DNA of 64,000 nucleotides from Kudoa neothunni. Lineage: Eukaryota; Animalia; Cnidaria. Position 1 is the stretch's first letter. Every line of letters starts with the position of its first letter. A program made the translations under genes and the position numbers. Below the pieces are notes generated by a model. That model made no database searches. It was not told the DNA's origin and saw nothing but the letters and a program-made list of their open reading frames with translations. The stretch is taken from the NCBI GenBank assembly GCA_964304625.1, contig OZ199839.1:11002647-11066646 (forward strand). The letters run 5' to 3'. Positions 42,767 to 63,778 of this stretch are shown here, in pieces.

Positions 42767-43507
42767 AAGGATATTTTATGTGCTTTAATATAATTTATTG
42801 GAGCTGGTTAATAACGTGAGGATTTAAGGAGAATCCCCATTTAAAATCAAAGTCTGTTACTTTTATCATTCATAAATCAAATCAAATTATTAAAAATTAA
42901 TATCTAAATAGAAAAATTTTATGTAATAAAGATTCTATGTTCATCCTAAAAAATTATTTCAAAATTGTTTGCTAAGGCTAAAAAATAATCGGGTAGGACT
43001 TTCATATATTTTGTGCCCAAAATATAAATTATGAAAATACTATATTTTAAAATCACTATTATTACTATTATGGACTGTTCTCAATTAAGAAATTCTATAT
43101 TATCCAATGCACACAACACTATAAATATTCACGTAAAACTCATTTAATAGTCATAAGGTAAATATTATTTTGCATTTTCTAAATTTATGATTTTGTTTTT
43201 ATCGGAATCGTTAAATTTTGATAATGGCCAAAATTAGAATTATGTTAATGAATTTATTTTCTTTCCGCATTAATGCTAAAGATTTATGGCTTTTTTGGAT
43301 TATTTGAGTTAGTTCGCAAATCATTTAATTAAATGCATTGAATTAATTATAAACAATTATTTACGAAAAGAATATGGTATGTATGTATATAACGATCATT
43401 GAATTCATTAGCCGATTACACTTATTTAAAGATTCATTCTATAATAGTGTTAAAATTATTTAAAGTTATTTGACAATTGTACGAATCGGAACGATAAAAT
43501 ATTGAAA

Positions 43508-45350
43508 ATGAAACTATTTTGGATTCTACTGATATGTAATTTTTTAATTTGGAGTTATAGTGTTGATTCTTTTAGATTGTTTCAATATTCTCTACTCAAG
43601 TACGGAAATTATTGATAATGATTATAGTAATAGCGAAAACCTTGGATTTGGAAACGGCTCTTCACCTGAAAATAAGCACCGAATTAAATGCATACTAAAT
43701 CAGAATAAGCCATTCGACCGGTATAAAAAAGGAGAGTACGATTATAATAATAAATCCAATCAAATCTGCGATGTAGAAAAGTTTCTAAGTGACTCAAAGA
43801 TAAGTCTTAACGCGCAAGAAAATAATTATGATAAGATTCGCAAAAAATTGTTTGAGGCAATTGAAGTAAGTAAGTTTTTAAAGCAGACGAAGTATATTTC
43901 AAATAATTATGAAAAAATTAAATCAATTATTGAAAAATACATTAACAATATTGATAATATTGTCCAAACCGAAAATACATTGAAAAGTGCTGCCGCGTCA
44001 TTTAAAAATAATAAAAGTGAATTTATTTCTAAATGGGAAGGTTACAAACAAGAATACGACAACTTTTACACATCAAAGAAAGAAATACAAGATATTTTCG
44101 ATTCAATAGACAGATCCATAAAAATTTGTTCTGGAAATGTGCAAAGCGTTCACGATTACAATTACGTAATTAGCAATTATAGTGTAAAAGACCTCTTGGA
44201 TACCAACTGGAATACGATAATCGATAGCGCTGGTAAGCTGAAAACTGCATGCGAAAATGAGAAAACTATTCCAAAAATCGATACAATTATAACCACTGCT
44301 TTTGATAATTATAAACAGATTATCAACGAAATTAAAGGGCAAAAAGACGATTTAACCAGTAAAGTTTCAGGTTTGTCCGATGAAGCTTCCAAATATAGTA
44401 GTCTGATGAATGATATCAACCAAATCACCCAAAATCATTTAACTACTAAACATGAACAGCTAACAGAAGGTTATCTTGATGCTGTTAAAATGATTGAAAC
44501 TAACAAAAGGGAACGGAGTTTCTGGAGCGATTATCTCAGAAGGGTATCTGTTCACGTATTAAAGAAAAGCGAAGCTGAAAAAGATTTATTTGAGAAAGCG
44601 ATTAGAGCTCTGAAGGAATATTTAAATGAGAATATAGACAAAGATGGAAATGAAGAAAAACTTAAAATATTAACACAACGTTTGGAAACAGACATCCGAA
44701 GTTTTAGCCAAAAACGGCAGTCGATATTATCCAAAATTACATTGGATGCTAAAAATGTAGATATCACAATTGAATGGATTAAAGCTATCTCTGATATAAT
44801 AATGTCACAATTTTATCAAAATAAAAACCGATATACGGCGTTATATGTGGGAAGATCAATTCCTAGCAATACCTACGCTTTCAATAGAAGCGCGACATCT
44901 ATTACCAAATATGTAAACGAACTTAAATCAACGGTGGAAAATATAAGAGAAGGATTGAGTAAAAGTACTCATCTTTACAATTCTGCTTCACGCAACAAGG
45001 ATGGAATTGAACATGAAGGAAAAAAACTGGAGGAAATATTTGAATCCCTACACATCAATGTACCGACTGTGCCTAAAAACGACGGAGGTAATTCAAAACT
45101 GAATACTATGAACCAAAAAAATGAGGTAACGACGGACCCAAAAATGAACAATATTACAGCTGAAGGGCAAGATCAATCATCAGAAACGACAACAGCTACA
45201 ATTACCAATAATTCGAAAAGTCAAAGCAAATCTAGTTTGATTGCTATCGTGGCAACTGTGTTAGGGCTTTTGGTGATTATTATTATTGTTGGAGTGGTAA
45301 TATACCGAACCAAATTGGCAACCAATCAAAAGTTCAACGATAAAATTTAG
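43508..45350 (+). CDS. Orphan type-I membrane surface protein (about 605 aa), copy A, intact
   Basis: Exon 1 (43508-43535), a 25-nt intron (43536-43560) and a long exon give signal peptide MKLFWILLILLILLDC. This is followed by a helical/coiled-coil ectodomain with 4 Cys, an S/T/N-rich stalk, TM LIAIVATVLGLLVIIIIVGVVIY and a short basic tail. Confidence 0.9.
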
Positions 45351-45522
45351 TCTTTGTTTGATGCAAAATTCATATTTATTTAATTCATTTTTAGTATTTT
45401 AGATTTATATGGAAAATTATTATTTTTTTATATTCATGTCTGAGTTTTATTTATGAAATTATAGAATTATTTTATTATTATAGTGAATTTATATATAATA
45501 ATATAAATGGTTTATAAAATAA

Positions 45523-45645
45523 CTAGTGCGAAAACCCAAGCGTTGCCGAGGAGTGGGTTAATTTAAAATTAAAAATGGTACTGGCTATTCTTATGGTAAT
45601 AAATATCTTCTATAATAGCTAAGATATTACAAAACTGATTTCATT
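45523..45645 (-). mobile_element. Helitron-like 3' end
   Basis: The minus strand ends cctcggcaacgcttgggttttcgcaCTAG-T (GC hairpin + CTAG). The paralogous locus lacks it, with A|T at 63494/63495. Confidence 0.65.
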
Positions 45646-46726
45646 AATGTGTAAAGCTATTTTTTATTTCCTCAAAAATAAAATTTCATAAAGATATCTT
45701 TTTATTAAAATTCACTGGTGAGTTTGAGCTTTATATCGTAGTTGGTTCTTTAAATTTGCCTACGTATATCCCCGTTTGTCAAAATAATACTTTGTGGAAT
45801 TTTTATTTAGTGGAGTAAATACTTTATTAAATATACAAATAGGCATAATTTCACAATTTCTAATATTTGACACTTGAGAATTCTTTTGACGATGTTGTAT
45901 TTGGGCATTTTAGATATTGAGGTTTATTCAAATTTATATTGCTTACACAATAATATAATTTTAAATCTTATTTTAAAATTTGTTATCTGGATTAAAAGTT
46001 CTTATCAATAATTAATAAATCGTTAAATTTAAAATATTTGAGTAACAATCTTACCTCAAGAGAAACTATACGCAATATTCTCTAAGTGTTATTTTCGTTA
46101 GCCTCACATTTCACAAAAATATTTACTTCTGTTAAAATTTTTGTAGATGAGTGAATGATTATTATTAAATTGAGATTTTATTTCCTTACCATGATTATTT
46201 ATGACAATTTATTGATTTGTGATTTTTCTAGGCGGGGGTCTCATAAATTGCCGCTATACTCTACGGAAAATAACGTTAATATTCAAAACATATGAGAATT
46301 TTTTAGTATCAAATTAAAATTTCAAAATGGATTCCTTTTTTTAATTTCACCACTTCTTTATCAACTGCATACGTTGATTATCAACATATAAATTTTTTTC
46401 ATTGTACATTAATGCGGTTTAAATAATAGCATTATTCAAACTTTATGCATCAAATTTTGACCATAAAATCTCCTAAATTTATTATACATAACCGTTATCA
46501 ATCTTAAATTAAAACCAATAAATATATTTAGAAATTTCTTTAAAAATCAACAGCTTTGCAGCACTACAAAAGAGGTTTCGTGCATATTAGACAAGGTTAC
46601 TTTGGCCGGCTAGATCGCATGGCGCACCTGGTTTATGACTAAAACCCCTGAACTTATTAGTAATATGAAAAACGTCATTATCAATCTTAAAACACGTTTT
46701 ACCGCTAGTGCATTTACGCATTCATA

Positions 46727-46792
46727 AAATCAGTTTTGTAATATCTTAGCCATTCTAGAAGGTATTCCTTACCGTAAGAATAGCCAGTACCA
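46727..46792 (+). repeat. Dispersed repeat (Helitron-like family), copy
   Basis: Matches 33387-33452 and the reverse complement of about 45578-45642. Confidence 0.75.
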
Positions 46793-47511
46793 TTGAAAAT
46801 GCGATTACCGTATCGAGAAGTCTTGATACTCGAAAATATCTAAAATTATTATAAATTTCGATTCGATGATGATCACTTTAATTGTTTAAGAAATAAGCTA
46901 AATCAGTGTATATCGACTTCTACTATCTCTGAAAAGTAACACAAAGTTCCCGGCTTCGTTAGTTATAAGGAATATTCTCCATTGAAAAGTTGGTCAAACC
47001 ATTCAAACAATACATTACTCTCTTCAATTAACCTATAGAAGTGTATATATGGTAATTACACACATTATTGGTTGGAAAAATTAAAATATAATAGTTATAT
47101 TGTAATAAAAATAATAAAAAATGTGCAGAACAAATTTGTAACCGACCCAATGTGGAAAATACAGTACACACTACTCTACGAGCTGAAATATTTTATTGAG
47201 TCCCCATTTTTATTACACATTTTTATTGGGTGAAAGAAATTGTCTCAAAAAAACGTATGAATAAAATAATGCGTATGGAATATTTTTAAAAGATTATAAA
47301 TGTATTGAAGTCCAAAGGTTGATCATATCGTAAATATTACATTTTAATTATAAAATTTTTATCATAAAATGATCGGACTGTCTATTGCAACAGGAGGAAA
47401 TAACCTTTAAAATAACATGTCAATTAAATTTTAAACTTCATTTTTATAATTGGTGACTTTTTTCGAAAAATAATTTAAAAATTTGGGGAAAATATAGTAG
47501 GTAGAATTTTC

Positions 47512-47710
47512 GGTAATGGGGAGTGTATGGCACCTGAAAATCACTATCTTACGAATGTTCTTTCTTTATATTTTTTCACGATTGTTTATAATAAAATAAT
47601 ATCGAGAGCAAAGATTCAGAACAAAATAACAACTTCTAAATTCTAACAATTCTTAAACCGAACATTGTGGGGTGCAGTGCAATCTCCATCATGAGACAAT
47701 GAACATTGAA
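47512..47710 (+). mobile_element. Merlin-family TIR
   Basis: ggtaatggggagtgtatggcacctgaaaatc..tttcacgattgtttataataaaataatatcgagagcaaagattcag is an inverted counterpart of 54870-55065. Confidence 0.7.
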
Positions 47711-48203
47711 TTTTCTCTTTCTCTCTATTCTTAATAACTCGACTGTTACATATTATCAATATTTAAATTTTTGTTTACTTTAATATAACAATTTTAAAAT
47801 GATAAACTTAAAAACAGGCATTTCGCATTTTTCACAAAAAACATCATATTTTCTATTACATAAATACATTGTATTAACTACTAATGTATATAAACAAGTT
47901 TATAATAGGTATTTTTAGTTTATAATTTTTTTGACGATTTTATATTTACTTATAAGATGATTATACTTGCATTTTTATTAACATTTATTAATTGCAAAAA
48001 TTATGCATGTAAATATCAACAATTCTAAATGTTCATTATGTCAAAGGCCTCATCAAAAAAATCTGTGCACAAATATTTTATTGAAAATTATTTATTTAAC
48101 AATTCTTTTGAATAAATAAAAATAGGAGCCAGAATCCATGTAAGATTTTAAAGACGGTGACAATAATTTACAATTTTTTATTGTTATTCTTAATTAATTA
48201 ATT

Positions 48204-48805
48204 CAAGGATTCTCAACCGGAGGGAAATGACGAGGGGTAAATTAAATAACATCCAATTTGGATGTGGAATTTTTTGCTTTATATGCTTGTGATGTATTGC
48301 AGGATTTCTAAGGAATTATATTATGTGGCGATATTAAAATCAATATGAATTAGGGAGAAATTCTTTCAAAATTAGTTAGGAACATGTATTTAACAGTTAT
48401 TTTTAAAACTATTATCAATCTCTATCTTTTATGCCTCTTTTATTTTTTGGTGATGCATCCCCTAATAATTATAATAATACTTAACATGATTATTTTCATG
48501 GTAATTAGTATTAATGGGTAAATAGTTGTGACTAATTTAATTATGTCTAGGACATAAGACCGAAGAAATTGGCAAGAAATAATTTACTTGGGAAAATCTG
48601 AAAAATTAAATCCATATACGGCTTGTAAGAGTTGATGGAATTAAAAATTGTTATTTTGCGAGCGTAAGTGTCTGTTAGGACAAAAATTTACCCCCAAACC
48701 TCAAATAACTCCTGCTATAACTAAACAGTATAAAACCTTACAGTAAACGTGAATTTTTCTTCCAAGTTAAGGGGATAAATATGAAAAAACGGTTGAGAAC
48801 CCCTG
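48204..48805. mobile_element. hAT-type MITE
   Basis: TIRs caaggattctcaaccg / cggttgagaacccctg (CAGGGGTTCTCAACC type). The 8-bp TSD is not conserved. Confidence 0.7.
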
Positions 48806-49121
48806 CATTATACGATTATATTTGATTTGTTTTATTAAGAATAAAACACAATTAATATTTAACTCAGTTTGGATTGTATATATTTTATTATATTATTATT
48901 TTTATAATCGTATTGGGATCGGATTTTAAATCTATACATTTTATAATTAGAGAATGTCGTTCTCGACGTTTATTTTCCAATTTCAGCAGTGCGCATGCTC
49001 ATACAAAACGTTCTGCGAAAAATAGTACAATACGTGGAAAAACAATATGATTTTATAATTTACCGTTATAATATAATATTGAAAGTATTCTAAATCGTTC
49101 ATTTGACAAACGCATCCTATC

Positions 49122-50184
49122 TTGCGTGAATACATGTTTCAGAGCGCGGAAATGTTAAAAATTCCCGCTGAAATTTTTTTTCAGCAATGCTGCAAACGAA
49201 TGGTGAAAAATCAAGATTTCGAAAAAGTGATCGGACGGAAAGCAACCTTCAATTTGTTTACTAATTATTGTAAACATCTCAACAAATTAACAAATTTTGA
49301 CATATTTCCGAAAATCTTTTCTCTTCTGTCTAATGGGAACATTTCCATGGAATTTTTAAAATTATTTAATATATCTGTAGGGGAAATATTGTAATTATAT
49401 TTCATCCAATTATGGAGATGTGAAAACCATATGAACTCTTGGATTCGATCGGCGTGGAAAAATCATACAATGGAGACAAAGATATTTAAATGAATTTAAG
49501 GTAAATATGTAATTCGCTTAATGATTCATTGGATGTCTTAGAAATACTCATAAATGATGAAACAGAATCATGGGTTGAATTCAACAAAAAGTCGGAAATG
49601 GCTGGAAAATATTAAACACAGCGTTGTATACAATTGTATGTACTGTACCATCTTATGTCAAGTACTTGTGGGATCTCTTTTCGAAACACTATTCCATGAT
49701 TCACAAGAATTTGAAGGAATGAATTTTTTGCAGATCTATTTTTATACAAAAGTGCAGAAAATTTCATGCAGAACTTGTTGACTCTATCAAACATAACGTC
49801 AATCGATCTTTTAACTACCAGATGTATCATCGGCAAATACGTATCCACCAAGGAGCGACTGTTTGGGAATGATCTAGAAGGCCAACAATACTTTGACAAA
49901 AATCATCGCAGATAACTTTTCTTATCAATCAGAAACAGCGGAACTCCATCAAAAATTACAATAGACACCTATTCTACATCTAAAAAAAATATTTGGCATA
50001 ACGGACGTCTCTTTAAACGTTTTTTCAATGAAATGTGTTTTTTCGATTTCATATTCTCGTCAACTGTATTTTGTTTTAACGGAAGTTTTACTTTACAATA
50101 TTTGCAAATTAATTCATTTTTAACATTTTCTATGTCCGTCCACTCTTCCAGAAAACTAGAAATTTCTCTCTTATGTCTAGTCAT
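49122..50184. mobile_element. Degraded hAT/CGGBP1-like transposase fragments
   Basis: Minus strand: BED-like ICKYCK..MKSKKH, then GVPLF..LR*FLSKY..FPNSRSL..TYLP. Plus strand: SIGVEKSYN (ERSFS-like) near 49450. Confidence 0.55.
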
Positions 50185-50319
50185 GTCTATGTTAACCCGG
50201 AAAAGATAGCCATCATTTATGCAAAATAAACGTCGAAACTTTAAAAAAATTCGACGGCTAAAATCGATTTTAATCGAAAACGGTATTCCCTACTTATAAT
50301 ATACCATATATATTCTTTA

Positions 50320-53300
50320 GGCTGTGTCTATTTTGTCGGACGCGCTTTTTCTCTTAAAATAATAATTCAATCGCTACAATTTTTTCCCAAAAATATCTTT
50401 TATAAATGCAGAATATAAATTTAGTGTCATTAATTCAGTGACGAATTTTAACATAGCTAATTTGTATCCATAATATCCAAATGAAAATACAGTAAAGTAA
50501 AACTATTTGGCCAATTCGTATTTAAAATTTTTATAATTAGGTAAATGTTTTTATCAGATGATTGATACACCACTAAAATTTAATAAAATGTTGAGTATTC
50601 TACTTTAAATAATAAATGTTTGAAATTATCTTGTATTGCGACGCCAAATAATTGTGACTGTTTAACTTCCACATAAAATTATATTTGAATATAATATATC
50701 GATATTGGTGTTGTTATTATTACTACTATCATCATTACCATAATTATAATTTTCTTTTTTTCTTAAACCAATAACTGTTTGAAATACACCTTTTGGTCTA
50801 CCTCTCAATTTCACTACTGTTGGCAGCTTAATTCCTATAATTTTATGAATTTAGCAAAATGGACAAAAGATACACACCCTTCAAAGATGGATTTTTAGTT
50901 GTGGTATCATCTACAATATTCGGGATCTCCATATCAATTATTGATGATGGAACATTATCATTAACTGCTTCTAGTATATCCTCATTCTCTAATCGTGATT
51001 CCTCAGTAACTAAACACGAAATAAAAATTCTACTAAAGACAATATCATTAATTACATGTTGGGATTGAAATCTCTTGATTGTTTATGATGACAGATTCAG
51101 ACATTAACTTGAACTAAATTAAGTTGATATATGAATAGTGGAAAAAATAGTCACCTTATCCAGAGAATCCCCATTGGAAATAAGAGAGATTAATTCACCT
51201 AAAATCTTTTTTAATGAATCATATTGACTCCCTGTTTTTTCAGACCCTAGCGAAGCTATTTTCTTACAAAGAATTTCTAGCTCCCTGTATCGCTTAAAAG
51301 CAGAATTCGGAACAGGGCACTGACTCGAAATTTCTGTAATACTTGGTTGCACACAACACGAAGGATTTTGAAGATATAAATTTTTGGTCATTTGAATAAA
51401 TGACAGGTAATATTCTTTGTGCCACCTCTTATTACAAATTTTCTCTTCATATAAATTCATGTTCATTATTTTTCTAGCGTAAATAATATGCCTACATGGT
51501 AACTCCATACTTACGTAGAAACAACATGTACAACTATTGGGATCAGGATTGGCATAGGATTCGATATGATTATTTATTTCATCTTGCATAATATTATACG
51601 CATATGAAGTCAACAATGTTTTATATTGTTCGTTAATGTCTGAATTTAATTTCTCAACAGTTTGGGTTGTCCACTCTCTAACTGCTTTATTCTCACGCTC
51701 AGTCCTCATACTTGATAAATAAATAAGCAGATCGCTGAAAAAGACTTCAATTGTTGAGAATTTTTTTATGATTTGTTTAATTTTGGAATTTATGCATTCT
51801 AATCGATTATTTGTTCTATTTAAAAAAGTACCCTTTAGGTTCATGTATGCCGGGCACCATTCATGTTTGATTGGATCCCAAGATTTATTATAATAAGTAA
51901 TGATTTTTTTGTTACATGTATTATTTAACAATTCATGGTAATTTTCATAAATTTTTGGATCATTGGTATAGCAAAGCTTTTGAATCAACTCTAAGGCAGT
52001 TTTTCTTTCGGCTTTGTTTATTCCCATTCTTAATGTAGAGATTTCTCTCCCAAATGTTCTTAAGACATGGTACAGGCATAAGTTTGTACTTACGTTAGGA
52101 AATATAGATCTTATAGAGTTTCTTTCAATCATGTCTTTATCCGTAATGAAACAAACTGTTTTGGTTGACATTTCCTCGTTATGTTTAAGTAGAGATTGAC
52201 ATAACCAGGTAACAGTCACGGTACTCTCCTCAGATAAAAGAGCAATAGCTCCTATTTGACTTTGCCCAAATGAATCGATAAACAGACATATATACAATGG
52301 CATACGATTATTGATTAATTTATAAGTGGCATCCATAAATACTAGTTCGGGAAATTTTTTAATAACGTTTTTCATATAAAGGTCTTGGAAAAATATTCCA
52401 GTCATTTCATTGGAGTTATTGTGCAATATTTCGATAGTTGCATTTGGGTGAGAATTTTTTATTGAATTAAACAATTCCGAAATATCCGACGAAACATTTT
52501 TTTTCAATGTTTGGATATAATTATGGATTTGCTTCAACGAAACCTTTTTTTGTGATTGGTTCATGATTTCTACTTGTACTCTTTTTAAATTTCCATCATA
52601 AAAATGAACATTTTTTATAAGATTCTTGCTTTCTTCATCTAATTTTCTATTCATTGGTAAAAAATCCCTAAAATGCTCATTTCTGTTGCAGCTGTGAGTA
52701 AGATCCAATTTTCTAATAACTAACATATTCATGTTTTTAGGAACTCGCAGTGTAATGAAGAAATTGCAACCACTTTTATGGCTGTTGATTTTTTCTCTTC
52801 CCAGCACTTTTAGGTTGTATCTGAATTCAAATTAATTACATCAACGTTTATATAGATAGTTTACAGTTTTACCACCATGAACACAACAAAAAGTGGCTTC
52901 ATAATAAACAAGATCAGAGTTCATGTCTCTATCAAATTTTTTTAGGGCAGTTGAGATTTTTCTAGAGTCTCGGATCCAGTAACAAAAGTTGTTCCACTTT
53001 GAGTACTTATCCATGAATTCTTTAGCCTTTTCAAAGTTTGTAAATGCATTTCCGACCATAGGTTCAGATGTAATATCCTGAATTAGTAGTGTTTGATCAG
53101 ACTCTCCTTCCATAGTGATTCTACTCGCGACTATCAAAGTTACAACCGCACGCTAGAGGGTATTTTACTCGTTTTATGCTGTTATTAACACATAAAATTA
53201 GATTAATTATATAAATAATACAGATTTATAAAAATTTAATGTCATTTATAATGATACTTATGAATGAGTTTAAAATATCCTCGATGTATTTTGATACCTA

Positions 53301-53431
53301 ATTATTAATTAAAAGATAAATGAAAACTAAATTTATATTCTGCATTTATAAAAGATATTTTTTGGAAAAAATTGTAGCGATTGAATTATTATTTTAAGAG
53401 AAAAAGCGCGTCCGGCAAAATAGACACTGCC
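50320..53431 (-). mobile_element. MULE/MuDR transposon (ZSWIM1/3-like), near-intact autonomous element
   Basis: TIRs of about 105 bp. Perfect 9-bp TSD TATTCTTTA (50311-50319, 53432-53440). Transposase motifs FMDATYK, ITDKD, CLYH and RTNNRLE, SWIM CTC..LPCRH, and a C-terminal RGRPKG. Confidence 0.97.
51119..53112 (-). CDS. MULE transposase (spliced; further 3' exons probably extend to about 50.7 kb)
   Basis: Exon 1 MEGESD..CVHGGKT, intron 52864-52821, then the 562-aa ORF. One extra A in an A6 run near 52790 breaks the frame. Confidence 0.85.
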
Positions 53432-53559
53432 TATTCTTTATGCATTAAAGAAAGCTGATATATCGTTTAATTTTAATCATTTTTGCATATTCATAGATAG
53501 ACATGTATTTATTTATTCAGTAGTATATTTAATCATACTAAAAAACGTTATTTAAAAAG

Positions 53560-55065
53560 TTCAAATTTTTCCCCATAAATTGATCTGAATAATTCCTCAG
53601 ATAAATATGCTTCTAAGTTTTCAAAAGAAACTCCTCTTTTTATTCTTTGGCATTTTGTTTCTTCAGTCTCCCCCATCAGGTCTCCGATTGGTATTCGTGT
53701 GAAACCCATCGCGAACATATTCTATAGAATGATTAATTTTTATATGATTATAACCAAGCGATGATAAACTATTGTAGGCAGACCATAAATCATTAAAAAT
53801 AGTCGACCTAGAAATGACTTCATTCTTGATAGTTTCGGTAAGGTTTCGGAATTTCCTTTTTTGATGTAGGAAAATATCGAACCTCCTTTAGTCATCTTTT
53901 GTTATTGTCGTCGACGTGACAAAGTGTCAAACTAAATATCCACGGCCCGTCAATACGGTTATCGTATCGTTCTCTGATGGCTCATATTGGCTTCAGCTCA
54001 TATCACCGATTGCTATAAGATCAAGAGTATAACAAGCCATAATAAAGAAATGTGATGTATTAAATAATAGAGATAATCACTTAGATCAACAAATTCTTTG
54101 TTTGGAGACGTCTTCCAAACATCTCTTTTTAAATAACGGTCACAATTATTTTTTCGTTTTCCATGGAGAAGGGTTTCATCTATTCCAACTAACGAAATCT
54201 TCTCCACTAAATTTGACTCGTTGATTAAAGTTGAGGGTGCAAATATCTCCAAGCTTTGTAAACCACATAGCTACCGTTTTCTTGTCCGAATTAATCATTT
54301 CGGACGCGGATAAAATAGAATTATCCATAGATCCGTAATAAATAATTTTAAAAATTTTTTTTGACTGTCAGGTTATGAGATGGACCATGACAACTTGAAA
54401 TAGAAAAGAACGTCCCGTTCCTAGGAGATACCTTGGTTTTGCATCTGACTCCCGTTAAGGTGGTTTTTAGAGACAACGTTATTACTTTTTTACAAAAATA
54501 GCAAAACGTATAATCATAATCATTCTGTTAGTATGATGTCATTTTTGGCATAGGTCTTCTGACATTCGATTTTCGTTTTGTTAATGAAAAAACATTTAAA
54601 ATTGTAACATTTAGAGCACCTATGCGGTTGAGAACGAAGATACCCTTTATGTAGCAATGCATTAAATAATTTCATGGGATCATTAATTAATGAAAAAAGG
54701 CGCCATTTTCTTAGAAAACTTAACGAATCCATTTCCTTAACAAATGCTAAGCTAACCCATTATTTTATTTAACAAAGTTTATATGTTGTTCAAATAAAGA
54801 AATTAAAATCATTATGTTCAATAATAAATCATGAAAGTAATGTTGAATTCGTAAATAAGTGAAAATTCAATGTTTGCTGTCACACGGAGGAGATTGTACA
54901 CGCATTCGACAGTGTTCAGGTCAAGAATTGTTAGAATTTAGAATTTGTTATTCTGAGCTGAATCTTTGCTCTCGATATTATTTTATTATAAACAATCGTG
55001 AAAAAATTAGAAAGAAGCAACATGCACAAGATAATGATTTTTAGGTGCCACACTCCCCTATTACC
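53560..55065 (-). mobile_element. Degenerate Merlin element
   Basis: Zn-ribbon HRCSKC, TVAMWFTKLGDICT, VGIDETLLHGKRKNN, GPWIF, GSTIFNDLWSAYN, INHSIEYV.DGFHTNT. TIR ggtaatag.. at 55065. Confidence 0.85.
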
Positions 55066-55477
55066 ATTATTTCTTCTTTCATTCGGTTTGTTATTCTATA
55101 CCTGATTATCGTATTTCGAATTATGCTCGTTGGTATCGTTTTTTTACTTTAAGTTAGTTATATCATTTTAAATGAGTATTTTGTAACAATGTTTAATATT
55201 TTTTCTAGTCTTGAAATATTATTATTTCCAATGTAGCTTTCATTATCTTAATGGTAATCAATGAACTAAAGATAAATTCATTGCAATATTCTGCAGACGT
55301 TGGCATATTTTGGTCTGTAAAAGACTTACGCCATTTTATAAGCGATTTGAACAAAGTTTAAATTTTTCTTTGGAGATTTCTTGTACTTGGGACTTGTGTA
55401 CGGTCATTAGATTTGACATTATAATTAGATGAAAATTTATCCTGTAGATATTGGCTGGCAGGAAATATTTTTATTAA

Positions 55478-57881
55478 CCCTTTCGTTCCCATTGTCCACG
55501 TTTAGTGGACAAAAATTAATTCGTTTATATATTTGTGCACATTAATTATTAAAGATTTATAATTATATATTAAACATAAGTTGTTACTCAATATATTAAA
55601 TGAGATAGCATATAATAAATGCTTTATGGTCATTTTTATTTGTGATACAACCCTCCCTTTTTATAACGCTTAAATAATCTAAAACATTTGGAAAAAATAA
55701 GTATCAATAAAATCATAAAATGTTACTGAAAAAAATTTAATATTGTAAAAAATGAAGCGAATATTTAATAAATAAAATTTAATTAATTTGTGATTTAAAT
55801 ATACCAAAAAAACACACAAATCTCCACGTGGGTATTATAGTGGACATTGGGACTTTGAGGACTTCCGATAGTATATTCCAATGGATCACGATATTGTTTT
55901 TTAGTCAGAAAGAAATTGGAAAAACCATCACAGAAGTAATTGTATTTCCAGATGCGGATAATTCAGAACCAGATGTGATGGTAGATGAGTTGGACTGTCC
56001 TATCATTCAAAACTACGTGGCAGAATTGGGTGATGAAACATATCAAGATTCCAGTGATTCTGATGATGATCAAATTTTAAATTTTAAGTAGGAAAAGAAA
56101 CAGAACGTTCCAAATCCAGCTGAAAATTTAGAAATCAATGAGACAATTTTTAGCGACTTGCAAGACCTCGTATTGCCCATTGAGTATTTCAAATTTTTCT
56201 TTCACGGATGAGTTTATATCGAATATTGCATATGAATCAAATCTGTACGCTACTCAACCAAAATTCCAATTTCAAAACTGATATTAAGGAAATAAAAAAA
56301 TATCTGGGGATTTTGATTATTATGAGGATAATAAGAATGCCGAGGTATCGATGTTATTGGTCGAAACTTGTGAACTATCCTCTCGTTTCCGAGGCTTTCT
56401 CAAGGAAACCGTTTTGAGAAAATATATAAATACTTGCACTTCGTGGATAACTCCTAAAATTATTACGGATCCTAATTCGCCAAAATACGACAAATTTGTT
56501 AAAATTAGACCTTTGTTTGATTTTGTTAGAGCATCGTTTCTAAAGATTGAGCCCGAAAGAAACCATTCAATTGACGAACAGGTTATCCCCGTTTAAAGGT
56601 AAATGTAAGGCCAAGCAATACGTCCCCAATAAACCAACGAAATGGGGGTTTAAAATGTTTGCGAGATGTGGTGTTAGTGGTTTGGTTTACGATTTTCATC
56701 TTTACGATGGACGAAAAACCCGCCGTCACCATAAGCTGTGGTCTTGTATCTGGCGATTTTGTCATAAAGCTGTGCGAAAGTCTACCGCTGAGCAAACCAT
56801 ATTTCACTTATTTCGACAACTGGTTTTACATCTATCCCCGCTCCAAATCTTCTTAAAACGAAGGAAATAATCTATTCTGTTGGTACGATACGTATTAACA
56901 GAGTTAAGGGTTGTCCGTTGAGTAGTGACAAATATTTAAAAAAAGAAGGACGTGGCTAGTATGATTTTGCTCATGACCCTGGTAATGGAATATCGATAAC
57001 AAGATGGTTTGATGGATCAGGTTGTCGCCCTTTCATCTACTCATTCCTCGATTGAGCCAGTCTCAATGTCAAAAAGATTCGATAGGTCTAAGAAAAAAAT
57101 GGTGGAAATTTCTTGTCCAGCTGTGGTTAAGGAATATAACCAAAATATGGGCGGGGTTGACCTATCCGATATGCTCATGTCACTTTATGTTATGAAACAT
57201 AAGTGCAGAAAGTATTATTTTAGAATCTTTTTTTGGGCTCTAAACACATGCATGGTTAACGCTTGGCTACTTTAACAAACGAAATTGTTCCGTGAGACGT
57301 ACCGATAGGAATGAAGTAATGGATTCGTTGGCTTTTTCTTTAGTTAGTGAAAGTCTTATCTACCATCAAGCAATGACTACTCAAACGAAACGTGGTAGAC
57401 CCTCACTTAATCAAACTGATACCGGAAAAAATTACTCCAACGTCGATAAAAAAAGAACGAGGTCTAATCCATTGAGTGATGAAATCTGTCTGGACATGGT
57501 TGGACATGTTCCTGAAATAATGACAACACATTCAAGATGTAGGGTTTGTCAAAAAAAGATCAAATTTAAATGTATGAAATGCCATTCATTTTGTTGTCTT
57601 AAGAAAGAAAGGAATTTTTTCTATAACTTTTATAATATGCTGTAAAAATATTTTAAAATTTTAATTTTCTTATGTTTTCTTTTTTTTTTGCGCGGAACCA
57701 ATGCGCGAATATGTCGAGGCAAATAAATACCCATTGTCCACCTTAGTGGACAGATTAAAAGAGTTTTAAATTGTCGTTAAATAATTTTTGTTTAAAGTAT
57801 AAATTTTAAATTATATCTAATTTTATAATTAATTTTAACACAAAAAAATTTCATGTAAAGAAAAATTCGGCAACGAAAGGG
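55478..57881 (+). mobile_element. piggyBac transposon (PGBD2/3-like), full length, pseudogenised
   Basis: TTAA at 55474-55477 and 57882-57885; TIR ccctttcgtt / aacgaaaggg. Internal palindromes tgtccac..gtggaca near both ends. Motifs SIDEQ, PNKPTKWGFK, YFDNWF and MGGVDLSD, plus a Cys-rich tail. Confidence 0.95.
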
Positions 57882-58349
57882 TTAAAATGAATTAAATAAT
57901 AATGTTTCACATGATTGTCATAAATGCTAAAAGTATAAATGATGCTCTTTATCGATAAAGTCTATTATAAAAATTATAACAACTAAATTAATGTAAAATT
58001 AATCGTTTAAATTGAAATTACATCTTAAAGTAATTTGTTTACAATCATTGATGCGAACAAACCACATTAACACAAGCTCACGTGTTCTTAATTTAAATCT
58101 CGTATATATCGATATTCTTGTTGTGTAAAATCAACGCAACATTTAAAAATCACTTATACAACAACTTAAGTATGGATTTATTGAAGCAAAGTATTAAACG
58201 ATGACGGCATATTTGGCCAATTTAGAGGAAAAAGTCTACTAATTTATTTTCTTTTGAAAATTTATTTAATAATAATTCATTTATTGTTATATGTATTTAT
58301 GAAATTAAAATTTTCATACGTACGTTATTTTGGTAGATATTCCCATCCA

Positions 58350-60599
58350 TTGCAATAGCCACCATCATTTTTTTAAAGTGAGACCCCTATTAGACATCAT
58401 TCGAGAGGCCAGTTTGAAAACTGAATCCGACTATAATCAATGCGTGGATGAGCAGATGATTCCATTTAAAGGTATTTACGAGAAATGAGTCTGGTGGTAT
58501 TGTTCATGACTTTTTTCTGGAGATGGCAATTTTACTTATGATGGCGAAATCTCGGGTTTTCAATACTCCGACATCGTTTTAAAATTGGCCCAGTCTATTG
58601 AAAAGAGGAAACAGACACCACATACATTTTGATAATTATTTTTCAACGCTTCCGCCGCATTCGATTATACTCAAAATGGGTCATCATTCCACGAGTACGA
58701 TGAGAAGAAATCGCCTCCGTAATAGTCCTATCAGTGATGATAAGACCTTTAAAAAAATTGAAGAGGGGCAATTACGAATACGCGCCATATGTAGATAAAG
58801 ATTCAAAAACTAATATTGTGTGTTTGTTAGACAGATCCGCCTTAACTGTGACATCGACAGCTCACTCTATTTCTCCTATGAGCACTATCGACAGATACGA
58901 TCGAAAAGAGAATAAAAGTTGTAAAAATCGATTGGACCATAAATCCAAAAAATGGTATAAGAGGATATTTTCTGTGGGCCATTATGCCAATGTTTTATAA
59001 AGATGTCTTCCAACGTTTACATCATTGTTGACCCCTGTGGCCTCATTATGAAACGTCACTAATTCTTTCTATTAGTATTTAACTCTTCATTATTCTCTCT
59101 ATATCATCACATTTCACCTGTTTTATATTCATGTATGCGTCACGAGAGGTTTTGACAATATCCTTGACAGATAACTTATCTACAAATGCCAATGCTTGTT
59201 AGACGAAATTCCCGCACAACAGTAAGAAAACACAATGAATAATGGCTCAGTATAGATATCATATATAAATCATAGTTATTATAATACATTATTATTTGAG
59301 TTTCCAGTTATAAGTTGTTGCAAACGGCTTTAAAAAAGAATAAATCATATGAGCGTTAATTATGACATGTTTTTCAAGTCATTTTTTTATGTGATACTTT
59401 AATTTCTGGATCATTGGTAGGGTTACACAATTGGAACATTATTTCCAGTCCAGCAGAACTTTGTTGGGTTTTCAAGTTTATAGTAAATGTCATTTATCCC
59501 GAATGAGCCTTTTCGATGGGGAATAGAAACGTCTATTAAAAATTTCGGCATTGTTGGAGGTAAGTTTGTTATTATTGAATATTCGATCATAGGTATTCCA
59601 CGATTCGATGGGGTATTTATTACTTTTAATATAGTTTCTGTTAAAATATTCTAGGAAATTATCTATATTGACATTTTTAAAATATACTTGATTCGTCGTA
59701 CAATTTTTTTAAATTCTTTCTCGACGACATCTCTAGGAGCAAACGCAAGCGAGGAAATCTATTTTATGTAAAAAAAACTCATAATGGTATATCATATCTT
59801 GGGGTTTTTAGTTTATGAATGACAAAATTTACATTCGCGCTATTATCCATTTTGTTTTATTTGTTATTCCACAAAGTTAATTGTTGTAATAAATTATTAT
59901 TTACTCACACGCGTGGGCCGGCAAATGTTTGTCTACGGTAAAAATTTGTCATACCATTCTTTGGGACCATTGATTTGTGTATCCTTAACAGATGACTTTT
60001 CTATAAACGCCAATGCATGTTAAACGAAATTCATTGCGAAAAATATTCGCTGTTTAATGGATTTAGGCGTTTTCGGTGAGCGAGCAATGGATGCATGTGA
60101 ATCAAGTGGTAAATATGATGAGGAAGAGTGGTAAGGGGCCGCCCACATCCGATTTGTTCCTACATCAATTCCAATGACAGCTAGGGTCTATAATCTTTTT
60201 GGTTCAAAGGTAAGTACAAACGTACGATTTGACGAAATATCTCATTTCCCAGAATAAATAGCGGCTAATGTAAGATGTTAATTTTGTGGACTGCATTCCA
60301 GAACAATGAGTCTTAAATGCGATGTCCACTTATGCGTAAATATAAGTATAAACTGCTTTTTAGACTATCATTCGTGTATTTTTTTGGGAACGACAACATC
60401 TTTATAAATTTTAGGACATGTGCATGACCAATTTTTGAGGCCAAGATGTCTCCGAATGATGCCATATGACACCATTAAGTAATAGACTTCCTAATTAAAT
60501 ATTTCTTTAATTTTTGCATATATCATTAATTTTTTAAATATTTTTCACATTTTCAGAAAAAAATATTTTCTCACTCCTTGGTTTTCAGGTCTCGAAGGG
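58350..60599 (+). mobile_element. Fragmented PGBD3-like piggyBac interrupted by a MULE fragment (about 59300-59900, minus)
   Basis: CVDEQMIPFKG and HFDNYF, a Cys-rich tail at about 60270-60370, and right end gaaggg-TTAA at about 60600. The minus strand carries SSLAFAP..FLEYFNRNYI..WN..TSNNAEIFNRR (MULE). Confidence 0.7.
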
Positions 60600-61550
60600 T
60601 TAAGTGGAAATTTAAAAATCCGTGCCCGCAAAAGACATTGTTTACTTGTTTAATAAGAAATTTTTTCATTATTTATTATGTAAAAATATTTTAACTTCGG
60701 CTATTTAAATTAAAAATGTTGACGTATCTATTAACTAAGAATATGGAGACTTAAAGGAAAAAACAGTACACAATAATGGCAATTTTTTACAACGTCTGCA
60801 GAGGAGTAATCTGCTTTTTTAAATAATCGATAATTAATTTTTGCTTAATATACATACAGCCATGTTTCAGATATAGTACAAATTTACATAAGAACCGAAT
60901 GTTTAATCTAAGTTTTTAAAAAGGAACATTTATTATTAAATAATCTAGGAATATTTTTGTTTTAAATATTGCATTGGTATATATGTTACATTGTATATGT
61001 CGTACGGTGATGATTGCTACTTTTATATCCGGAAATATGATTAAATAGTTCTTCCGGTTTCCGGTTATCGAGGTTCGACTGTATTTGAAAATCATTATTT
61101 TTCGCGATTATAAACTTTTCTTGGTCAGGGAGTTCGTTATTTTCAAAAGTAGACAATTATCACTATAAAAAATCCACAAGAAATTTAATTAATAATTATA
61201 AGGTAAATATAATTTGTATTTTCTAAATTTATGATTTTGTTTTTATCGGAATCGTTAAATTTTTGATAATGACCAAAATTAGAATTATGTGAATGAATTT
61301 ATAGTTGTTTCATATTAACGCTAAACATTGAACGATTTTTCGGATTATTTTGAATTGGTTGGCCATTTATTTAATTAAATCGGGTGAATTAATTATAAAC
61401 AATTATTTACGAAAAGAATATGGTATGTATATAAGGATCATTGAATTCATTAGCCGATTATACCTATATAAAGATTCCATCTATAATAGTGTTATAATTA
61501 TTTAAAGTTATTTGACAATTGTACGAATCGGAACCGATAAAATATTGAAA

Positions 61551-63394
61551 ATGAAAACCATCTTTGGATTCTATTGATATGTAATTTTTAAATTTAGAAT
61601 TATAGTTATGATTCTTTTAGATTGTTTCAATATTCTCTATTCAAGTACCGAAATTATCGATAATGATTATAGGAATAGCGCAAACGACACATCACCTGAA
61701 ATGATGTACCGAATTAAATGCATGATAAATCAAAATTTGCCATTCGAACAATATAAAGCAGAAAAATACAATTACACCAATGAGACGAGCCAAGTTTGCG
61801 ATGTGGCAGATTTTGTAAATAACTCAACAAGTACTCTTAACCAAGCAAGAAAATGAATATGGTTTGAAAAGCCAAAGACTGCAGGAAATAATCGAAGTAA
61901 GTAAGTTTATAAATCAGACGACATTTATTTCAAATAACTACATAAATATCAAAACTATTATGGATACTCACATCGGCAAAATTCAAAATATTATCCTGAA
62001 CGAAAGTAAACTAAAAAGTGATGCCAAGTTGTTTAAAGATAAAAAAAGTGAATTTATTTCTAAATGGGAAGGTTACAAAAACAAATACGACCAAATTAAT
62101 GCGGCAAAGGGAAAAATAAAAGATATTTTCGATTCAATAGCCAAATCGATAAAAATTTGTTCTGGAAATGTGAAAAACGTTACCGATTTCAATTATGTAA
62201 TTGGAAAATATAATGTGAGCGACTATTTGGATGAGAATTGGAAAATAATTACTGAAGGTGCTGAAGAGTTGAAAACTGCATGTCAAAACCGATAACGAAA
62301 AGACTATTCCCACCATAGACACATCTATCACCACGGCTTTTGATAATTATAAACAGATTATCAACGAAATTAAAGGGCAAAAAGACGATTTAACCAGTAA
62401 AGTTTCAGGTTTGTCCGATGAAGCTTCCAAATTATAGTAGTCTGATAAATGATATAAATCAAATCACTCATAATAATTTAATTGCTAAATACGATCAACT
62501 AACGGAAGGTTATAATGAAGCCCTCAAAATGATTGAAAATAATAAACGAGAAAGGAGTTTATGGGGCGATTATATCGTTAGAGTGTCTGCTCATTTATCA
62601 AAGGGAAGCGCAGTTGAAATAGATTCATTCGAGAAAGCAATTACCGCTCTAAATGGATATTTGAAAGTGAATATAGACGAAGATGAAAATGAAGGAAAAC
62701 TTAACATATTAACAAAAACGTTTGAGAAACGAAATCGAGAATTTTCGCACCCCAGAGGGATACAATGCTAAACATAGCCAAGTTGAATGCAAAAAACGTA
62801 GAAATCACCGAAAAAATGGATCGAAGCTATCTCTGATGTATTAGAATCACGATTTTATCAAAATAAAGAACGATATCGAGATATATATGTGGAAAATTCG
62901 ACTCCCAGCAATACCTACGCTTTCAATAGAAGCGCGACATCTATTACCGAATATGTAAACGAACTTAAATCAACGGTGGAAAATATAAGTGAAGGGATTG
63001 AGTAAAAGTACTCATCTTTACAATTCTGCTTCACGCAACAAGGATGGAATTGAACATGAAGGAAAAAAACTGGAGGAAATATTTGAATCCCTACACATCA
63101 ATGTACCGACTGTGCCTAAAAACGACGGAGGTAATTCAAAACTGAATACTATGAACCAAACAAAATGAGGTAACGACGGATCCAAAAATGAACAATATTA
63201 CAGCTGAAGAGCAAGATCAATCATCAGAAACGACAACAGCTACAATTACTAATGACTCGAAAAGTCAAAGCAAATCTAGTTTGATTGCTATCGTGGCAAC
63301 TGTGTTAGGGCTTTTGGTGATTATTATTATTGTTGGAGCGGTAATATACCGAACCAAATTGGCAACCAATCAAAAGTTCAACGATAAAATTTAG
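61551..63394 (+). pseudogene. Orphan type-I membrane surface protein, copy B (frameshifted in this sequence; pseudogene or assembly errors)
   Basis: Collinear paralog of 43508-45350 with the same 25-nt intron (61581-61605), the same Cys positions and a near-identical stalk/TM/tail. Multiple 1-bp insertions, mostly extending homopolymers. Confidence 0.85.
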
Positions 63395-63778
63395 TCTTTG
63401 TTTGATGCAAAATTCATATTTATTTAATTCATTTTTAGTATTTTAGATTTATATGGAAAATTTTATTAAATAGTGTAAATGGTTTATAAAATAATATATT
63501 AGCTGATAATAAATTTTAACTTATATGCTGCGTGAAATAGAATGAACATAAGGTGCAGTTCGCGTTTATTTTTTTTTAGTTGATAAAGCCTAAAAATATT
63601 ATAGCTTTGAATTTTTATTAATTATTAAGATCTTGAATTTGAATAAAATAGAGTTTTATTTAATAATTTCATTTAATTAAATATTTTTCATGTATTTACA
63701 TATTTTGGGAAAGCGTTTGTGATTTCCATAAGTTATTAAGATTAACACGAAGAACCACATAAAATCGTCTAGTTTAAT

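What the first reader, a model, noticed from the sequence alone, without database searches (positions are those of the whole stretch)
43150..63500. Candidate variant surface antigen family: two orphan membrane proteins with a variable helical head on an invariant stalk
Seen: two same-strand paralogs 18 kb apart. They share about 350 bp of upstream sequence, exon 1 with a 25-nt intron, the four ectodomain cysteines (RIKC, QI/VCD, IKICSGN, LKTAC), and a nearly identical last ~160 codons plus 3' flank. The N-terminal ~240 aa and a second helical segment are strongly diverged. Hydrophobic heptad positions tend to be kept while the residues between them change (YEKIKSIIEKYINNIDNIV vs YINIKTIMDTHIGKIQNII). 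Established: a signal peptide, Cys-pinned helical bundle, spacer and anchor with a variable head and constant base is the architecture of parasite surface families such as trypanosome VSG/ISG. Inference: this is a lineage-specific, host-exposed antigen or adhesin family under diversifying selection. I recognise no homolog.
Basis: partly seen in the sequence, partly recalled or inferred. Interest (0 to 1): 0.85.

Follow-up and report, generated by a model that had tools for sequence, protein, structure and literature searches.

The report
Orphan helical surface-protein family in Kudoa
The window holds one working gene and one broken copy of a 26-locus family, found only in this fish parasite (almost certainly Kudoa neothunni), that encodes membrane-anchored helical-bundle proteins whose outer parts diverge fast and are shuffled between copies; this makes them candidate host-facing coat proteins, but no expression data exist.

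Summary
Copy 1 (43508-45350) is an intact gene with a 28-nt exon 1, a 25-nt intron and a 1.79-kb exon 2. Copy 2 (61551-63394) is a pseudogene, with a stop in exon 1 and about 12 frame-breaking indels.

Genome size, three chromosomes plus a mitochondrial circle, GC content and the (TAAACC)n telomere all match the published Kudoa neothunni assembly.

The family has 26 loci: 15 full-length, 6 variant or partial, and 5 broken. 22 of them lie within 1.5 Mb of a chromosome end. No homolog appeared in Pfam, PDB, 1.84 billion protein representatives or the word-based searches.

The predicted protein has:
- a signal peptide;
- a four-cysteine three-helix-bundle head;
- a second three-helix bundle;
- an N/T/S-rich stalk;
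- a transmembrane helix and a short tail.

Fold matches, including trypanosome receptors and ISG65, sit within helical-bundle noise.

Cluster copies, the pseudogene included, are clear gene-conversion mosaics. Flanks are 95-100% identical where the heads are only 75-80% identical. Omega is 0.5-0.7 in this cluster. It reaches 1.84 (p=0.0065) in the youngest pair elsewhere.

The "invariant stalk" reflects homogenisation, not constraint. Family-wide, the head is the most conserved part.

Surface exposure and antigenic switching remain untested. First-stage notes on neighbouring windows had already flagged this same cluster.

The parts
43117..43507 (+). Conserved 5' flank (promoter / 5'UTR region) of copy 1. 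It is more conserved between cluster copies than the coding head.
   Evidence: g1 versus g5 is 98-100% identical, g1 versus g3 93-98%, and g1 versus the pseudogene 81-92%.
43470..43485 (+). Candidate cis-element (one-mismatch version of TCGA-N6/7-ACGAA), 23-38 nt upstream of the ATG.
   Evidence: Exact or one-mismatch copies sit 8-30 nt upstream of the ATG in most family lineages, although the rest of the upstream sequence is unrelated. Genome-wide there are 333 matches against 142 for the reversed control.
43508..43535 (+). Exon 1 of copy 1 (g1): 28 nt, phase 1, encoding the start of the signal peptide.
   Evidence: Read from the sequence. A short phase-1 exon 1 of 28-37 nt is conserved in all 18 genes examined.
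43536..43560 (+). Predicted 25-nt intron (GTAATT...TTATAG).
   Evidence: Without splicing, the ATG frame stops after 34 codons. Intron position and phase are conserved family-wide, with lengths of 25-48 nt. There is no RNA evidence.
43561..45350 (+). Exon 2 of copy 1 (g1), including the TAG stop at 45348-45350. It encodes the ectodomain, stalk, transmembrane helix and tail.
   Evidence: Intact 596-codon ORF. AF2 model pLDDT is 78.8, about 90 over the ectodomain.
43641..44345 (+). Head domain: an elongated three-helix bundle with four invariant Cys and the H-x-IKC..N-x-N-x-PF..Y cap motif.
   Evidence: Alignments A1 and A2. Domain model pLDDT 86.3, pTM 0.74.
44346..45059 (+). Second three-helix bundle (residues 263-500).
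   Evidence: AF2 helices 262-333, 338-414 and 446-496. VIA-align matches it to generic three-helix bundles with Z up to 11.3.
45060..45233 (+). Disordered N/T/S-rich stalk. It carries two of the protein's seven N-x-S/T sequons.
   Evidence: pLDDT below 50 for residues 504-560. Composition is N 16%, T 16%, S 11%.
45234..45347 (+). Transmembrane helix (residues 559-581) and a 15-residue basic cytoplasmic tail.
   Evidence: The best 20-residue hydropathy window averages 3.29 on the Kyte-Doolittle scale. 15 of 17 aligned members have such a helix.
45351..45450 (+). Conserved 3' flank.
   Evidence: 100% identical between g1, g3 and g5. In g1 versus g3 the near-identity (99.9%) continues for another 1 kb.
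61161..61550 (+). Conserved 5' flank of the pseudogene copy.
   Evidence: 81-92% identical to g1 and 86-95% to g6.
61551..63394 (+). Pseudogene copy (ps2). It has a stop in exon 1 and about 12 frame-breaking indels. It is a mosaic whose flanks match g6, whose head segment is 100% identical to g5, and whose tail is 100% identical to g1.

Best explanation
The region holds one intact gene (g1) and one pseudogene (ps2) of a family restricted, as far as the databases show, to this parasite. The parasite is almost certainly Kudoa neothunni, a myxozoan that lives in tuna muscle.

Each intact gene encodes a type I membrane glycoprotein with these parts:
- a signal peptide split by a tiny phase-1 intron;
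- a head made of a long three-helix bundle, carrying four invariant cysteines and an invariant N-terminal cap motif;
- a second three-helix bundle;
- a flexible N/T/S-rich stalk, probably glycosylated;
- one transmembrane helix and a short basic tail.

My reading is that these proteins stand on the parasite's plasma membrane as rod-like coat or contact proteins. I cannot tell which life stage.

The family grows by segmental duplication in the distal parts of the chromosomes and decays by pseudogene formation. Within a cluster it is reshuffled by short-tract gene conversion that also involves pseudogenes. The 5' and 3' ends and flanks are kept nearly identical, while the ectodomain-coding middle stays different. 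The head evolves at omega of about 1 or above.

Shown here: gene models apart from RNA proof of the intron, family size and location, lack of homologs, mosaicism, the contrast between flank and body divergence, and the omega values.

Inferred: membrane topology, glycosylation, surface exposure and any role towards the host.
For: Organism:
- The genome has 40,260,978 bases in 4 contigs: 17.15, 12.04 and 11.05 Mb plus an 18.2-kb circle-sized contig. GC is about 30%.
- (TAAACC)n occurs at one chromosome end only.
- All of this matches the K. neothunni assembly in PMC12239612.

Family:
- 26 loci were found with the protein and with the profile.
- The alignment has 9 invariant residues, including 4 Cys.
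- The exon 1 / intron structure is conserved in 18 genes.
- 15 of 17 aligned members have a C-terminal transmembrane helix.

Orphan status:
- Pfam gave nothing above cut-off.
- The PDB sequence search gave only coiled-coil noise.
- The profile search against 1.84 billion representatives gave only 8 weak stalk/TM hits, which are unrelated proteins.
- Two word-based searches were blank, and the Atlas search was blank.

Structure: confident all-helical models.

Evolution:
- Longest-shared-run permutation tests gave p<=0.001 in 9 of 10 pairs. The neighbour-incompatibility (PHI-like) test gave p=0.0005, and the dominant split changes along the gene.
- ps2 is identical to g5 over 253 bp, while its flanks match g6.
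- g1 versus g3: flanks 95-100% identical, head 80%.
- The independent pair C3:1205k / C3:830k has a 98.3-98.9% identical 3' flank but an 88.7% identical ORF.
- Pairwise ML omega for the head is 2.13, 1.34, 0.83 and 1.20. For bundle 2 it is 1.63, 0.85, 0.54 and 0.41. Ectodomain omega is 1.84 (p=0.0065) in the youngest pair.
- 22 of 26 loci, or 11 of 15 clusters, lie within 1.5 Mb of a chromosome end, binomial p=4e-5 with a post hoc threshold.
Against: - There is no expression or localisation evidence. The DNA-like runs cover gene and spacer alike, the one RNA run read had no parasite reads, and the source paper also reports almost no parasite RNA.
- The 25-nt intron is about half the genome's mean intron length and is unverified.
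- Within the window's own cluster omega is below 1 (0.49-0.67).
- The single significant omega > 1 comes from one pair among four tested.
- Kudoa plasmodia grow inside muscle fibres (my own knowledge), where antibody pressure is weak.
- The databases probably hold few or no Kudoa proteins. The window's own protein was not listed. So 'orphan' means absent outside Kudoa, not necessarily species-specific.
- Helical-bundle predictions built from a 17-sequence paralog alignment may overstate confidence.
Confidence: 0.6

Rival explanations
1. This is a true antigenic-variation system. One family member is expressed at a time, and new head variants are assembled by segmental gene conversion from silent copies and pseudogenes. 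The conserved 5' and 3' ends serve as recombination anchors, as in trypanosome VSG cassettes.
For: - The ends and flanks are conserved while the middle varies.
- Mosaic tracts are statistically supported and include a pseudogene partner.
- 5 of the 26 loci are pseudogenes.
- The loci are enriched towards chromosome ends, and subfamilies are shared between different ends.
- Omega exceeds 1 in the youngest pair.
- Antigenic change during development has been reported for other myxozoans (preprint 10.64898/2026.02.11.705288).
Against: - The repertoire is small: about 20 open copies falling into five old subfamilies.
- Most pairs have omega below 1.
- The head carries the family's only invariant motif, which suggests a conserved job.
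- No closer donor for g1's head exists anywhere in the assembly.
- There are no expression data at all.
- The main fish stage is intracellular (my own knowledge).
Confidence: 0.15
2. This is a family of receptors or cell-contact proteins with a conserved binding function. Examples would be nutrient uptake from the host cell, or adhesion between the enclosing and enclosed cells of the myxozoan body plan. On this reading, paralog divergence reflects relaxed constraint and sub-specialisation rather than immune pressure.
For: - The invariant H, K, N, Y and P residues and the four Cys all lie in the head.
- The head is the best-conserved domain at depth: 30% mean identity against 23% for the other parts.
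- Omega is mostly 0.5-0.8.
- The nearest, though weak, fold neighbours include the trypanosome haptoglobin-haemoglobin and transferrin receptors.
Against: - Omega is at or above 1 in the head of three of four pairs and is significant in one.
- Pseudogene content is high, and the flank-versus-body pattern is more typical of contingency families.
- The fold matches are within noise.
Confidence: 0.2
3. These are not functional cellular genes. They would be decaying passengers of transposons or a domesticated or viral envelope-type gene, and the open frames persist by chance or by recent copying.
For: - The cluster is embedded in segmental duplications rich in MULE and piggyBac-like sequences.
- The downstream flanks contain dispersed repeats.
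Against: - 15 full-length ORFs of about 600 codons stay open in a 30% GC genome despite 17-25% identity between subfamilies.
- Invariant residues and gene structure are conserved.
- Overall omega is significantly below 1.
- There is no match to viral proteins (BFVD best E 0.016, TM <= 0.16).
- There is no internal hydrophobic fusion-peptide-like segment, only the signal peptide and the transmembrane helix.
- The flank repeats are 99-100% identical only within a paralog pair and at most 88% identical elsewhere.
Confidence: 0.05

Closest known systems
Trypanosoma brucei three-helix-bundle surface proteins (ISG65/ISG75, haptoglobin-haemoglobin receptor, transferrin receptor, VSG N-terminal domain)
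   Same: - Parasite surface architecture: signal peptide, elongated disulfide-pinned three-helix bundle, spacer and membrane anchor. ISGs are also type I transmembrane proteins.
- Multigene families located near chromosome ends.
- Gene conversion that involves pseudogenes.
- These proteins appear among the top structural neighbours (Z 7.5-8.6).
   Different: - No sequence or HMM similarity.
- The fold scores are no better than those for BAR domains, kinase scaffolds and designed bundles, so homology is not supported.
- There are two bundles in tandem.
- The family has about 26 loci rather than hundreds to thousands.
- Expression switching is unknown.
- The organism is an animal (a cnidarian), not a kinetoplastid.
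Multi-copy membrane protein families reported in the myxozoan Sphaerospora molnari (VSP-like, RIFIN/STEVOR-like, ETRAMP-like; preprint 10.64898/2026.02.11.705288)
   Same: They are lineage-specific, duplicated, single-pass membrane proteins of a myxozoan, proposed as immune-evasion or attachment surface proteins.
   Different: - Those families are Cys-rich (more than 10% Cys, with CXXC motifs) or Plasmodium-like small proteins.
- The Kudoa family has 5 Cys in 596 residues, is all-helical and matches none of those Pfam families.
Borrelia helical outer-surface lipoprotein families (e.g. PFam12 BBH37/BBK01)
   Same: They are paralogous families of elongated helical-bundle surface proteins in a pathogen, and they are weak structural neighbours (Z 7.2-10.0).
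   Different: They are bacterial lipoproteins of about 190 residues with no transmembrane helix and no Cys pattern. There is no sequence similarity.

Membership tests
Trypanosome VSG / ISG superfamily | Sequence or HMM match to the family models (Pfam VSG and ISG domains) | tested here: not met
   The Pfam scan lists 7 families with E <= 1, all below cut-off, and none is a VSG or ISG family. The PDB sequence search shows only coiled-coil noise.
Trypanosome VSG / ISG superfamily | Specific structural similarity of the three-helix-bundle ectodomain | tested here: inconclusive
   HpHbR Z 8.6/8.4, TfR Z 8.0 and ISG65 Z 7.5-8.6, with rmsd 5-7 A. These are interleaved with BAR, TBK1 and designed bundles, and the tool's noise level for helical models is about 13. 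Foldseek best E is 0.09-0.12.
Trypanosome VSG / ISG superfamily | Membrane anchor: GPI for VSG, type I transmembrane helix for ISG | tested here: met
   There is a C-terminal hydrophobic helix followed by a short basic tail, which is the ISG-like type I topology, in 15 of 17 members. This is a prediction from sequence only.
Trypanosome VSG / ISG superfamily | Mutually exclusive expression and switching | not testable with these tools
   No parasite RNA reads were found. The source paper reports the same.
Giardia-type variant-specific surface proteins (VSP), as claimed for S. molnari | More than 10% Cys with repeated CXXC motifs and a conserved C-terminal pentapeptide | tested here: not met
   There are 5-9 Cys per ~600 residues, no CXXC repeats, and the tails differ between subfamilies.
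Plasmodium RIFIN/STEVOR | Pfam family match | tested here: not met
   No match.
Class I viral fusion glycoproteins | Internal fusion peptide plus heptad-repeat hairpin; structural match to viral envelope proteins | tested here: not met
   The only hydrophobic segments seen are the signal peptide and the transmembrane helix. The BFVD search best E is 0.016 with TM <= 0.16, and no envelope proteins appear.

The most novel reading that the evidence does not exclude
An animal parasite (a cnidarian) has evolved, independently of protists, a cassette-type surface-variation system. It would consist of rod-like helical coat proteins, genes in distal chromosome regions, conserved 5' and 3' recombination anchors, and heads rebuilt by segmental gene conversion from silent copies and pseudogenes. 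It may use a shared upstream TCGA-N6-ACGA element for controlled expression.
Probability: 0.15. Interest if true: 0.85.

Novelty: new variant of a known kind. Interest (0 to 1): 0.55.

Why it matters
Myxozoans cause major losses in fisheries and aquaculture, yet almost nothing is known about their surface molecules. Candidate variant families have only just been proposed for one blood-dwelling species.

This family gives Kudoa a concrete, testable set of candidate coat proteins. It could supply diagnostic or vaccine antigens and markers of strain diversity.

It is also a possible case of convergent evolution between an animal and trypanosome-type helical surface proteins, with diversification driven by gene conversion. 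The chromosome-level assembly makes the recombination history readable.

Tried and rejected
1. RNA evidence. The look-up of sequencing runs found four runs from one sample that hold the stretch. When laid, three of them cover gene and spacer alike and never skip the intron, so they behave as DNA. The RNA run with the same species label gave 0 reads. Expression and the intron therefore could not be tested.

2. Homolog searches were all blank or non-specific:
- Pfam;
- PDB sequences;
- phmmer-type word search with the protein and with the head alignment;
- the exhaustive profile search, whose 8 hits are unrelated Ser/Thr-rich stalk plus transmembrane proteins;
- ESM Atlas by features and by shape (TM <= 0.25).

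3. Fold searches of the whole model and of the head alone gave only generic helical bundles. I rejected any claim of homology to trypanosome receptors, BAR domains or viral fusion proteins.

4. I looked for a donor for g1's divergent head elsewhere in the genome. None is closer than 81%.

5. I checked whether independent transposon insertions explain the near-identical flanks. This was rejected: the repeats are 99-100% identical only within a pair and at most 88% identical elsewhere, and the identity starts directly at the stop codon.

6. There are no Rfam families or tRNAs in the window.

7. No site-model dN/dS was run. codeml and HyPhy are not available, and recombination would bias them. 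I used counting and pairwise ML methods instead.

9. The spliced exon 1 + exon 2 model was not sent to any search or fold tool. Exon 2 was used by reference, and exon 1 (9 codons) is too short to search. One script joined exon 1 to the first 120 nt of exon 2, only to read the signal peptide.

10. No positive control was run to show that the protein databases contain Kudoa proteins.

Full report
**What is in the sequence**

The window is about 30% GC. Read in the standard code, it has only two ORFs longer than 200 aa, and one of them is 43560-45350 on the + strand.

An ATG at 43508 opens a 28-nt exon that encodes the start of a hydrophobic leader. A GT..AG interval of 25 nt (43536-43560) joins it in phase 1 to the long ORF. 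Without that splice, the ATG frame stops after 34 codons.

The second copy starts 18,043 bp downstream. It shares about 400 bp of upstream sequence, all four Cys motifs and an almost identical 3' third.

That second copy is broken:
- Two extra bases in exon 1 create a stop after 8 codons.
- About 12 further indels that are not multiples of three disrupt the frame.
- Its longest ORFs are 143 and 117 aa.
- The protein search recovers it only as six or more frame segments with internal stops.

**Whose genome**

The assembly has 40,260,978 bases in four contigs of 17.15, 12.04 and 11.05 Mb plus 18.2 kb. The repeat (TAAACC)n occurs only at the right end of contig 2.

The published Kudoa neothunni assembly was recovered from yellowfin tuna data. 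It is 40.2 Mb with an N50 of 12.0 Mb, three chromosomes plus a circular mitochondrial genome, 30.41% GC, and a (TAAACC)n telomere at one chromosome end (PMC12239612). I take the identification as almost certain. The organism is therefore a myxozoan, a highly reduced parasitic cnidarian of fish muscle.

**The family**

Searching the genome with g1 and then with a 17-member profile finds 26 loci:
- 15 full-length ORFs of 590-668 codons that carry a C-terminal transmembrane helix;
- two whose transmembrane part lies in a separate downstream frame;
- two divergent ORFs;
- one head-less 335-codon variant;
- one partial copy;
- five broken copies.

Subfamilies are only 17-25% identical to g1, yet nine residues are invariant: H40, K43, C44, N49, Y60, C70, C190, C231 and P238. 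All 18 genes examined keep a 28-37-nt phase-1 first exon, a GTAA-type donor and an intron of 25-48 nt. That comparative conservation is the only support for the intron.

The tree has five well-supported subfamilies, and three of them span two different chromosome ends. 22 of the 26 loci, or 11 of 15 clusters, lie within 1.5 Mb of a scaffold end. The binomial p is 4e-5, but the threshold was chosen after seeing the data and only one end has a telomere.

The window's cluster (C2:11.046-11.113 Mb) has seven loci on one strand: four intact genes, the head-less variant and two pseudogenes. They sit inside segmental duplications that also carry a MULE-type transposase and piggyBac-like fragments.

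**No relatives elsewhere**

All of these searches were blank or non-specific:
- Pfam gives nothing above cut-off.
- PDB sequences give only coiled-coil noise.
- The word-based search of 5.8 billion clusters is blank for the protein and for the head alignment.
- The exhaustive profile search of 1.84 billion representatives gives eight hits. All are to the Ser/Thr-rich stalk plus transmembrane segment of plainly unrelated proteins.
- The Atlas searches are blank or weak.

One caveat applies. The window's own protein is not in those collections, so other Kudoa species may simply be missing from them.

**Predicted protein**

AlphaFold2 was run with the paralog alignment. It gives a confident all-helical ectodomain, with pLDDT of about 90 for residues 30-500. 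It also gives a disordered segment at residues 504-560 and a C-terminal helix. The head modelled alone has pLDDT 86 and pTM 0.74.

The head (residues ~28-262) and the second domain (263-500) are each elongated three-helix bundles. The stalk is rich in N, T and S. The protein has seven N-x-S/T sequons, and a 23-residue hydrophobic helix precedes a 15-residue basic tail.

Fold searches return only generic helical bundles:
- Foldseek E is at least 0.09.
- VIA-align Z reaches 11.3 for the second bundle and 9.7 for the head. The tool's own noise level for helical models is about 13.
- Trypanosome HpHbR, TfR, ISG65 and a metacyclic ISP are among the neighbours (Z 7.2-8.9). So are BAR domains, TBK1/IKK scaffolds and designed proteins.
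- Viral proteins do not match.

The likeness to trypanosome surface proteins is therefore one of architecture, not demonstrated ancestry.

**How the copies evolve**

Along the gene, the closest pair keeps changing:
- ps2 equals g5 over 253 bp.
- g1 equals g3 over about 100 bp.
- g1 equals ps2 over about 145 bp.

Longest-shared-run permutation tests give p<=0.001 in nine of ten pairs. A neighbour-incompatibility test gives p=0.0005.

The flanks of ps2 match g6 (95%), so ps2 has exchanged internal segments with g5 and g1.

The flanks are far more alike than the coding middle. For g1 versus g3 the figures are:

| Segment | Identity |
|---|---|
| Upstream | 95-97% |
| Downstream, over 1.1 kb | 99.9-100% |
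| Head | 80% |
| Middle | 85% |

An independent pair 375 kb apart on contig 3 shows the same contrast: the 3' flank is 98.3-98.9% identical and the ORF 88.7%. The flank repeats are pair-specific, which rules out independent transposon insertions.

No closer donor for g1's head exists in the assembly.

Synonymous divergence falls from 0.3-0.7 in the head to 0.03-0.18 in the last 150 codons, while omega there is no lower. The 'invariant stalk' is therefore a product of homogenisation or recent shared copying, not of stronger constraint.

**Selection**

Counting methods give pN/pS of 0.63 for the four intact cluster genes, significantly below 1. Only residues 111-200 of the head are near 1.24, and that is not significant.

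Pairwise codon-model ML (F3x4 codon frequencies) gives these omega values:

| Pair | Head omega | Second bundle omega |
|---|---|---|
| C3:1205k / C3:830k | 2.13 | 1.63 |
| C2:246k / C2:971k | 1.34 | 0.85 |
| g1 / g3 | 0.83 | 0.54 |
| g5 / g6 | 1.20 | 0.41 |

For the youngest pair (C3:1205k / C3:830k), the whole ectodomain has omega 1.84 with LRT p=0.0065. A counting test agrees, with p=0.016 at kappa 1 and p=0.0005 at kappa 2.

So the head evolves near neutrality or faster, and the second bundle is moderately constrained. Positive selection is supported in one pair only. At depth the picture reverses: the head is the best-conserved domain, at 30% mean identity against 23% for the other parts.

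**Reading**

The best-supported explanation is a parasite-specific family of rod-like type I membrane glycoproteins. The family expands, decays and is reshuffled by duplication and gene conversion in distal chromosome regions, and the outer domains are kept different between neighbouring copies.

It fits the general pattern of pathogen contingency families. A true switching system, a conserved-ligand receptor role and a cell-cell contact role all remain open, because nothing is known about expression or localisation.

A short bipartite motif, TCGA-N6-ACGA(A), recurs 8-30 nt upstream of the start codon across subfamilies whose upstream DNA is otherwise unrelated. It may be a shared control element.

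**Limits**

- Only DNA-like contigs were available.
- The joined spliced coding sequence was not submitted to any search or fold tool. Exon 2 was used by reference.
- The disulfide pairing could not be read, because model coordinates are not exposed.

Noticed in passing
window 51119-53137 (-): There is an intact 562-aa ORF with ZSWIM1-3 RNaseH-like, MULE transposase and SWIM domains, plus an adjacent 98-aa ORF with a ZSWIM3 N-terminal domain. A 97.6% identical copy lies about 29 kb downstream in the same segmental duplication, beyond the window's end. It could be an active or domesticated MULE.
   Followed up: partly
window 56547-56870 (+): A 107-aa ORF fragment matches the piggyBac-type DDE_Tnp_1_7 transposase. 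It looks like a decayed element between the two family copies.
   Followed up: no
window 39284-39872 and 41275-41863: A pair of 589-bp inverted repeats, 98.8% identical and about 1.4 kb apart, lies just upstream of the duplicated unit. They may be terminal inverted repeats of a DNA transposon.
   Followed up: no
window 43470-43485; L008, L009, L010, L012, L014, L021 upstream of their ATGs: A bipartite motif, TCGA-N6-ACGA(A), sits 8-30 nt upstream of the start codon in most subfamilies although the surrounding sequence is unrelated. Genome-wide there are 333 matches against 142 for the reversed control. It may be a family or general core-promoter element.
   Followed up: partly
L005:1434-2478 (G000:C2:11089984-11090961): A head-less paralog keeps exon 1, the intron and an open 335-codon frame, but lacks the whole four-Cys head domain. 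The reading frame runs from the signal peptide straight into the second bundle.
   Followed up: partly
G000:C3:10250215-10252186 and C3:10255776-10257679: Two members have 551- and 557-codon ORFs that end before the transmembrane helix. The TM-coding part follows in a separate downstream frame. This could be a second intron, a frameshift or a secreted variant.
   Followed up: no
window 3078-3425 (+) and 8699-9034 (-): Exon-sized ORFs match the RagA/Gtr1 GTPase and a cation-efflux transporter. These are ordinary intron-rich host-keeping genes upstream of the cluster.
   Followed up: no
G000:C2:12039536-12040069: The (TAAACC)n telomere repeat is found at only one of the six scaffold ends, as the source paper reports. 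The other ends may be incomplete, so distances to 'chromosome ends' are lower bounds.
   Followed up: yes
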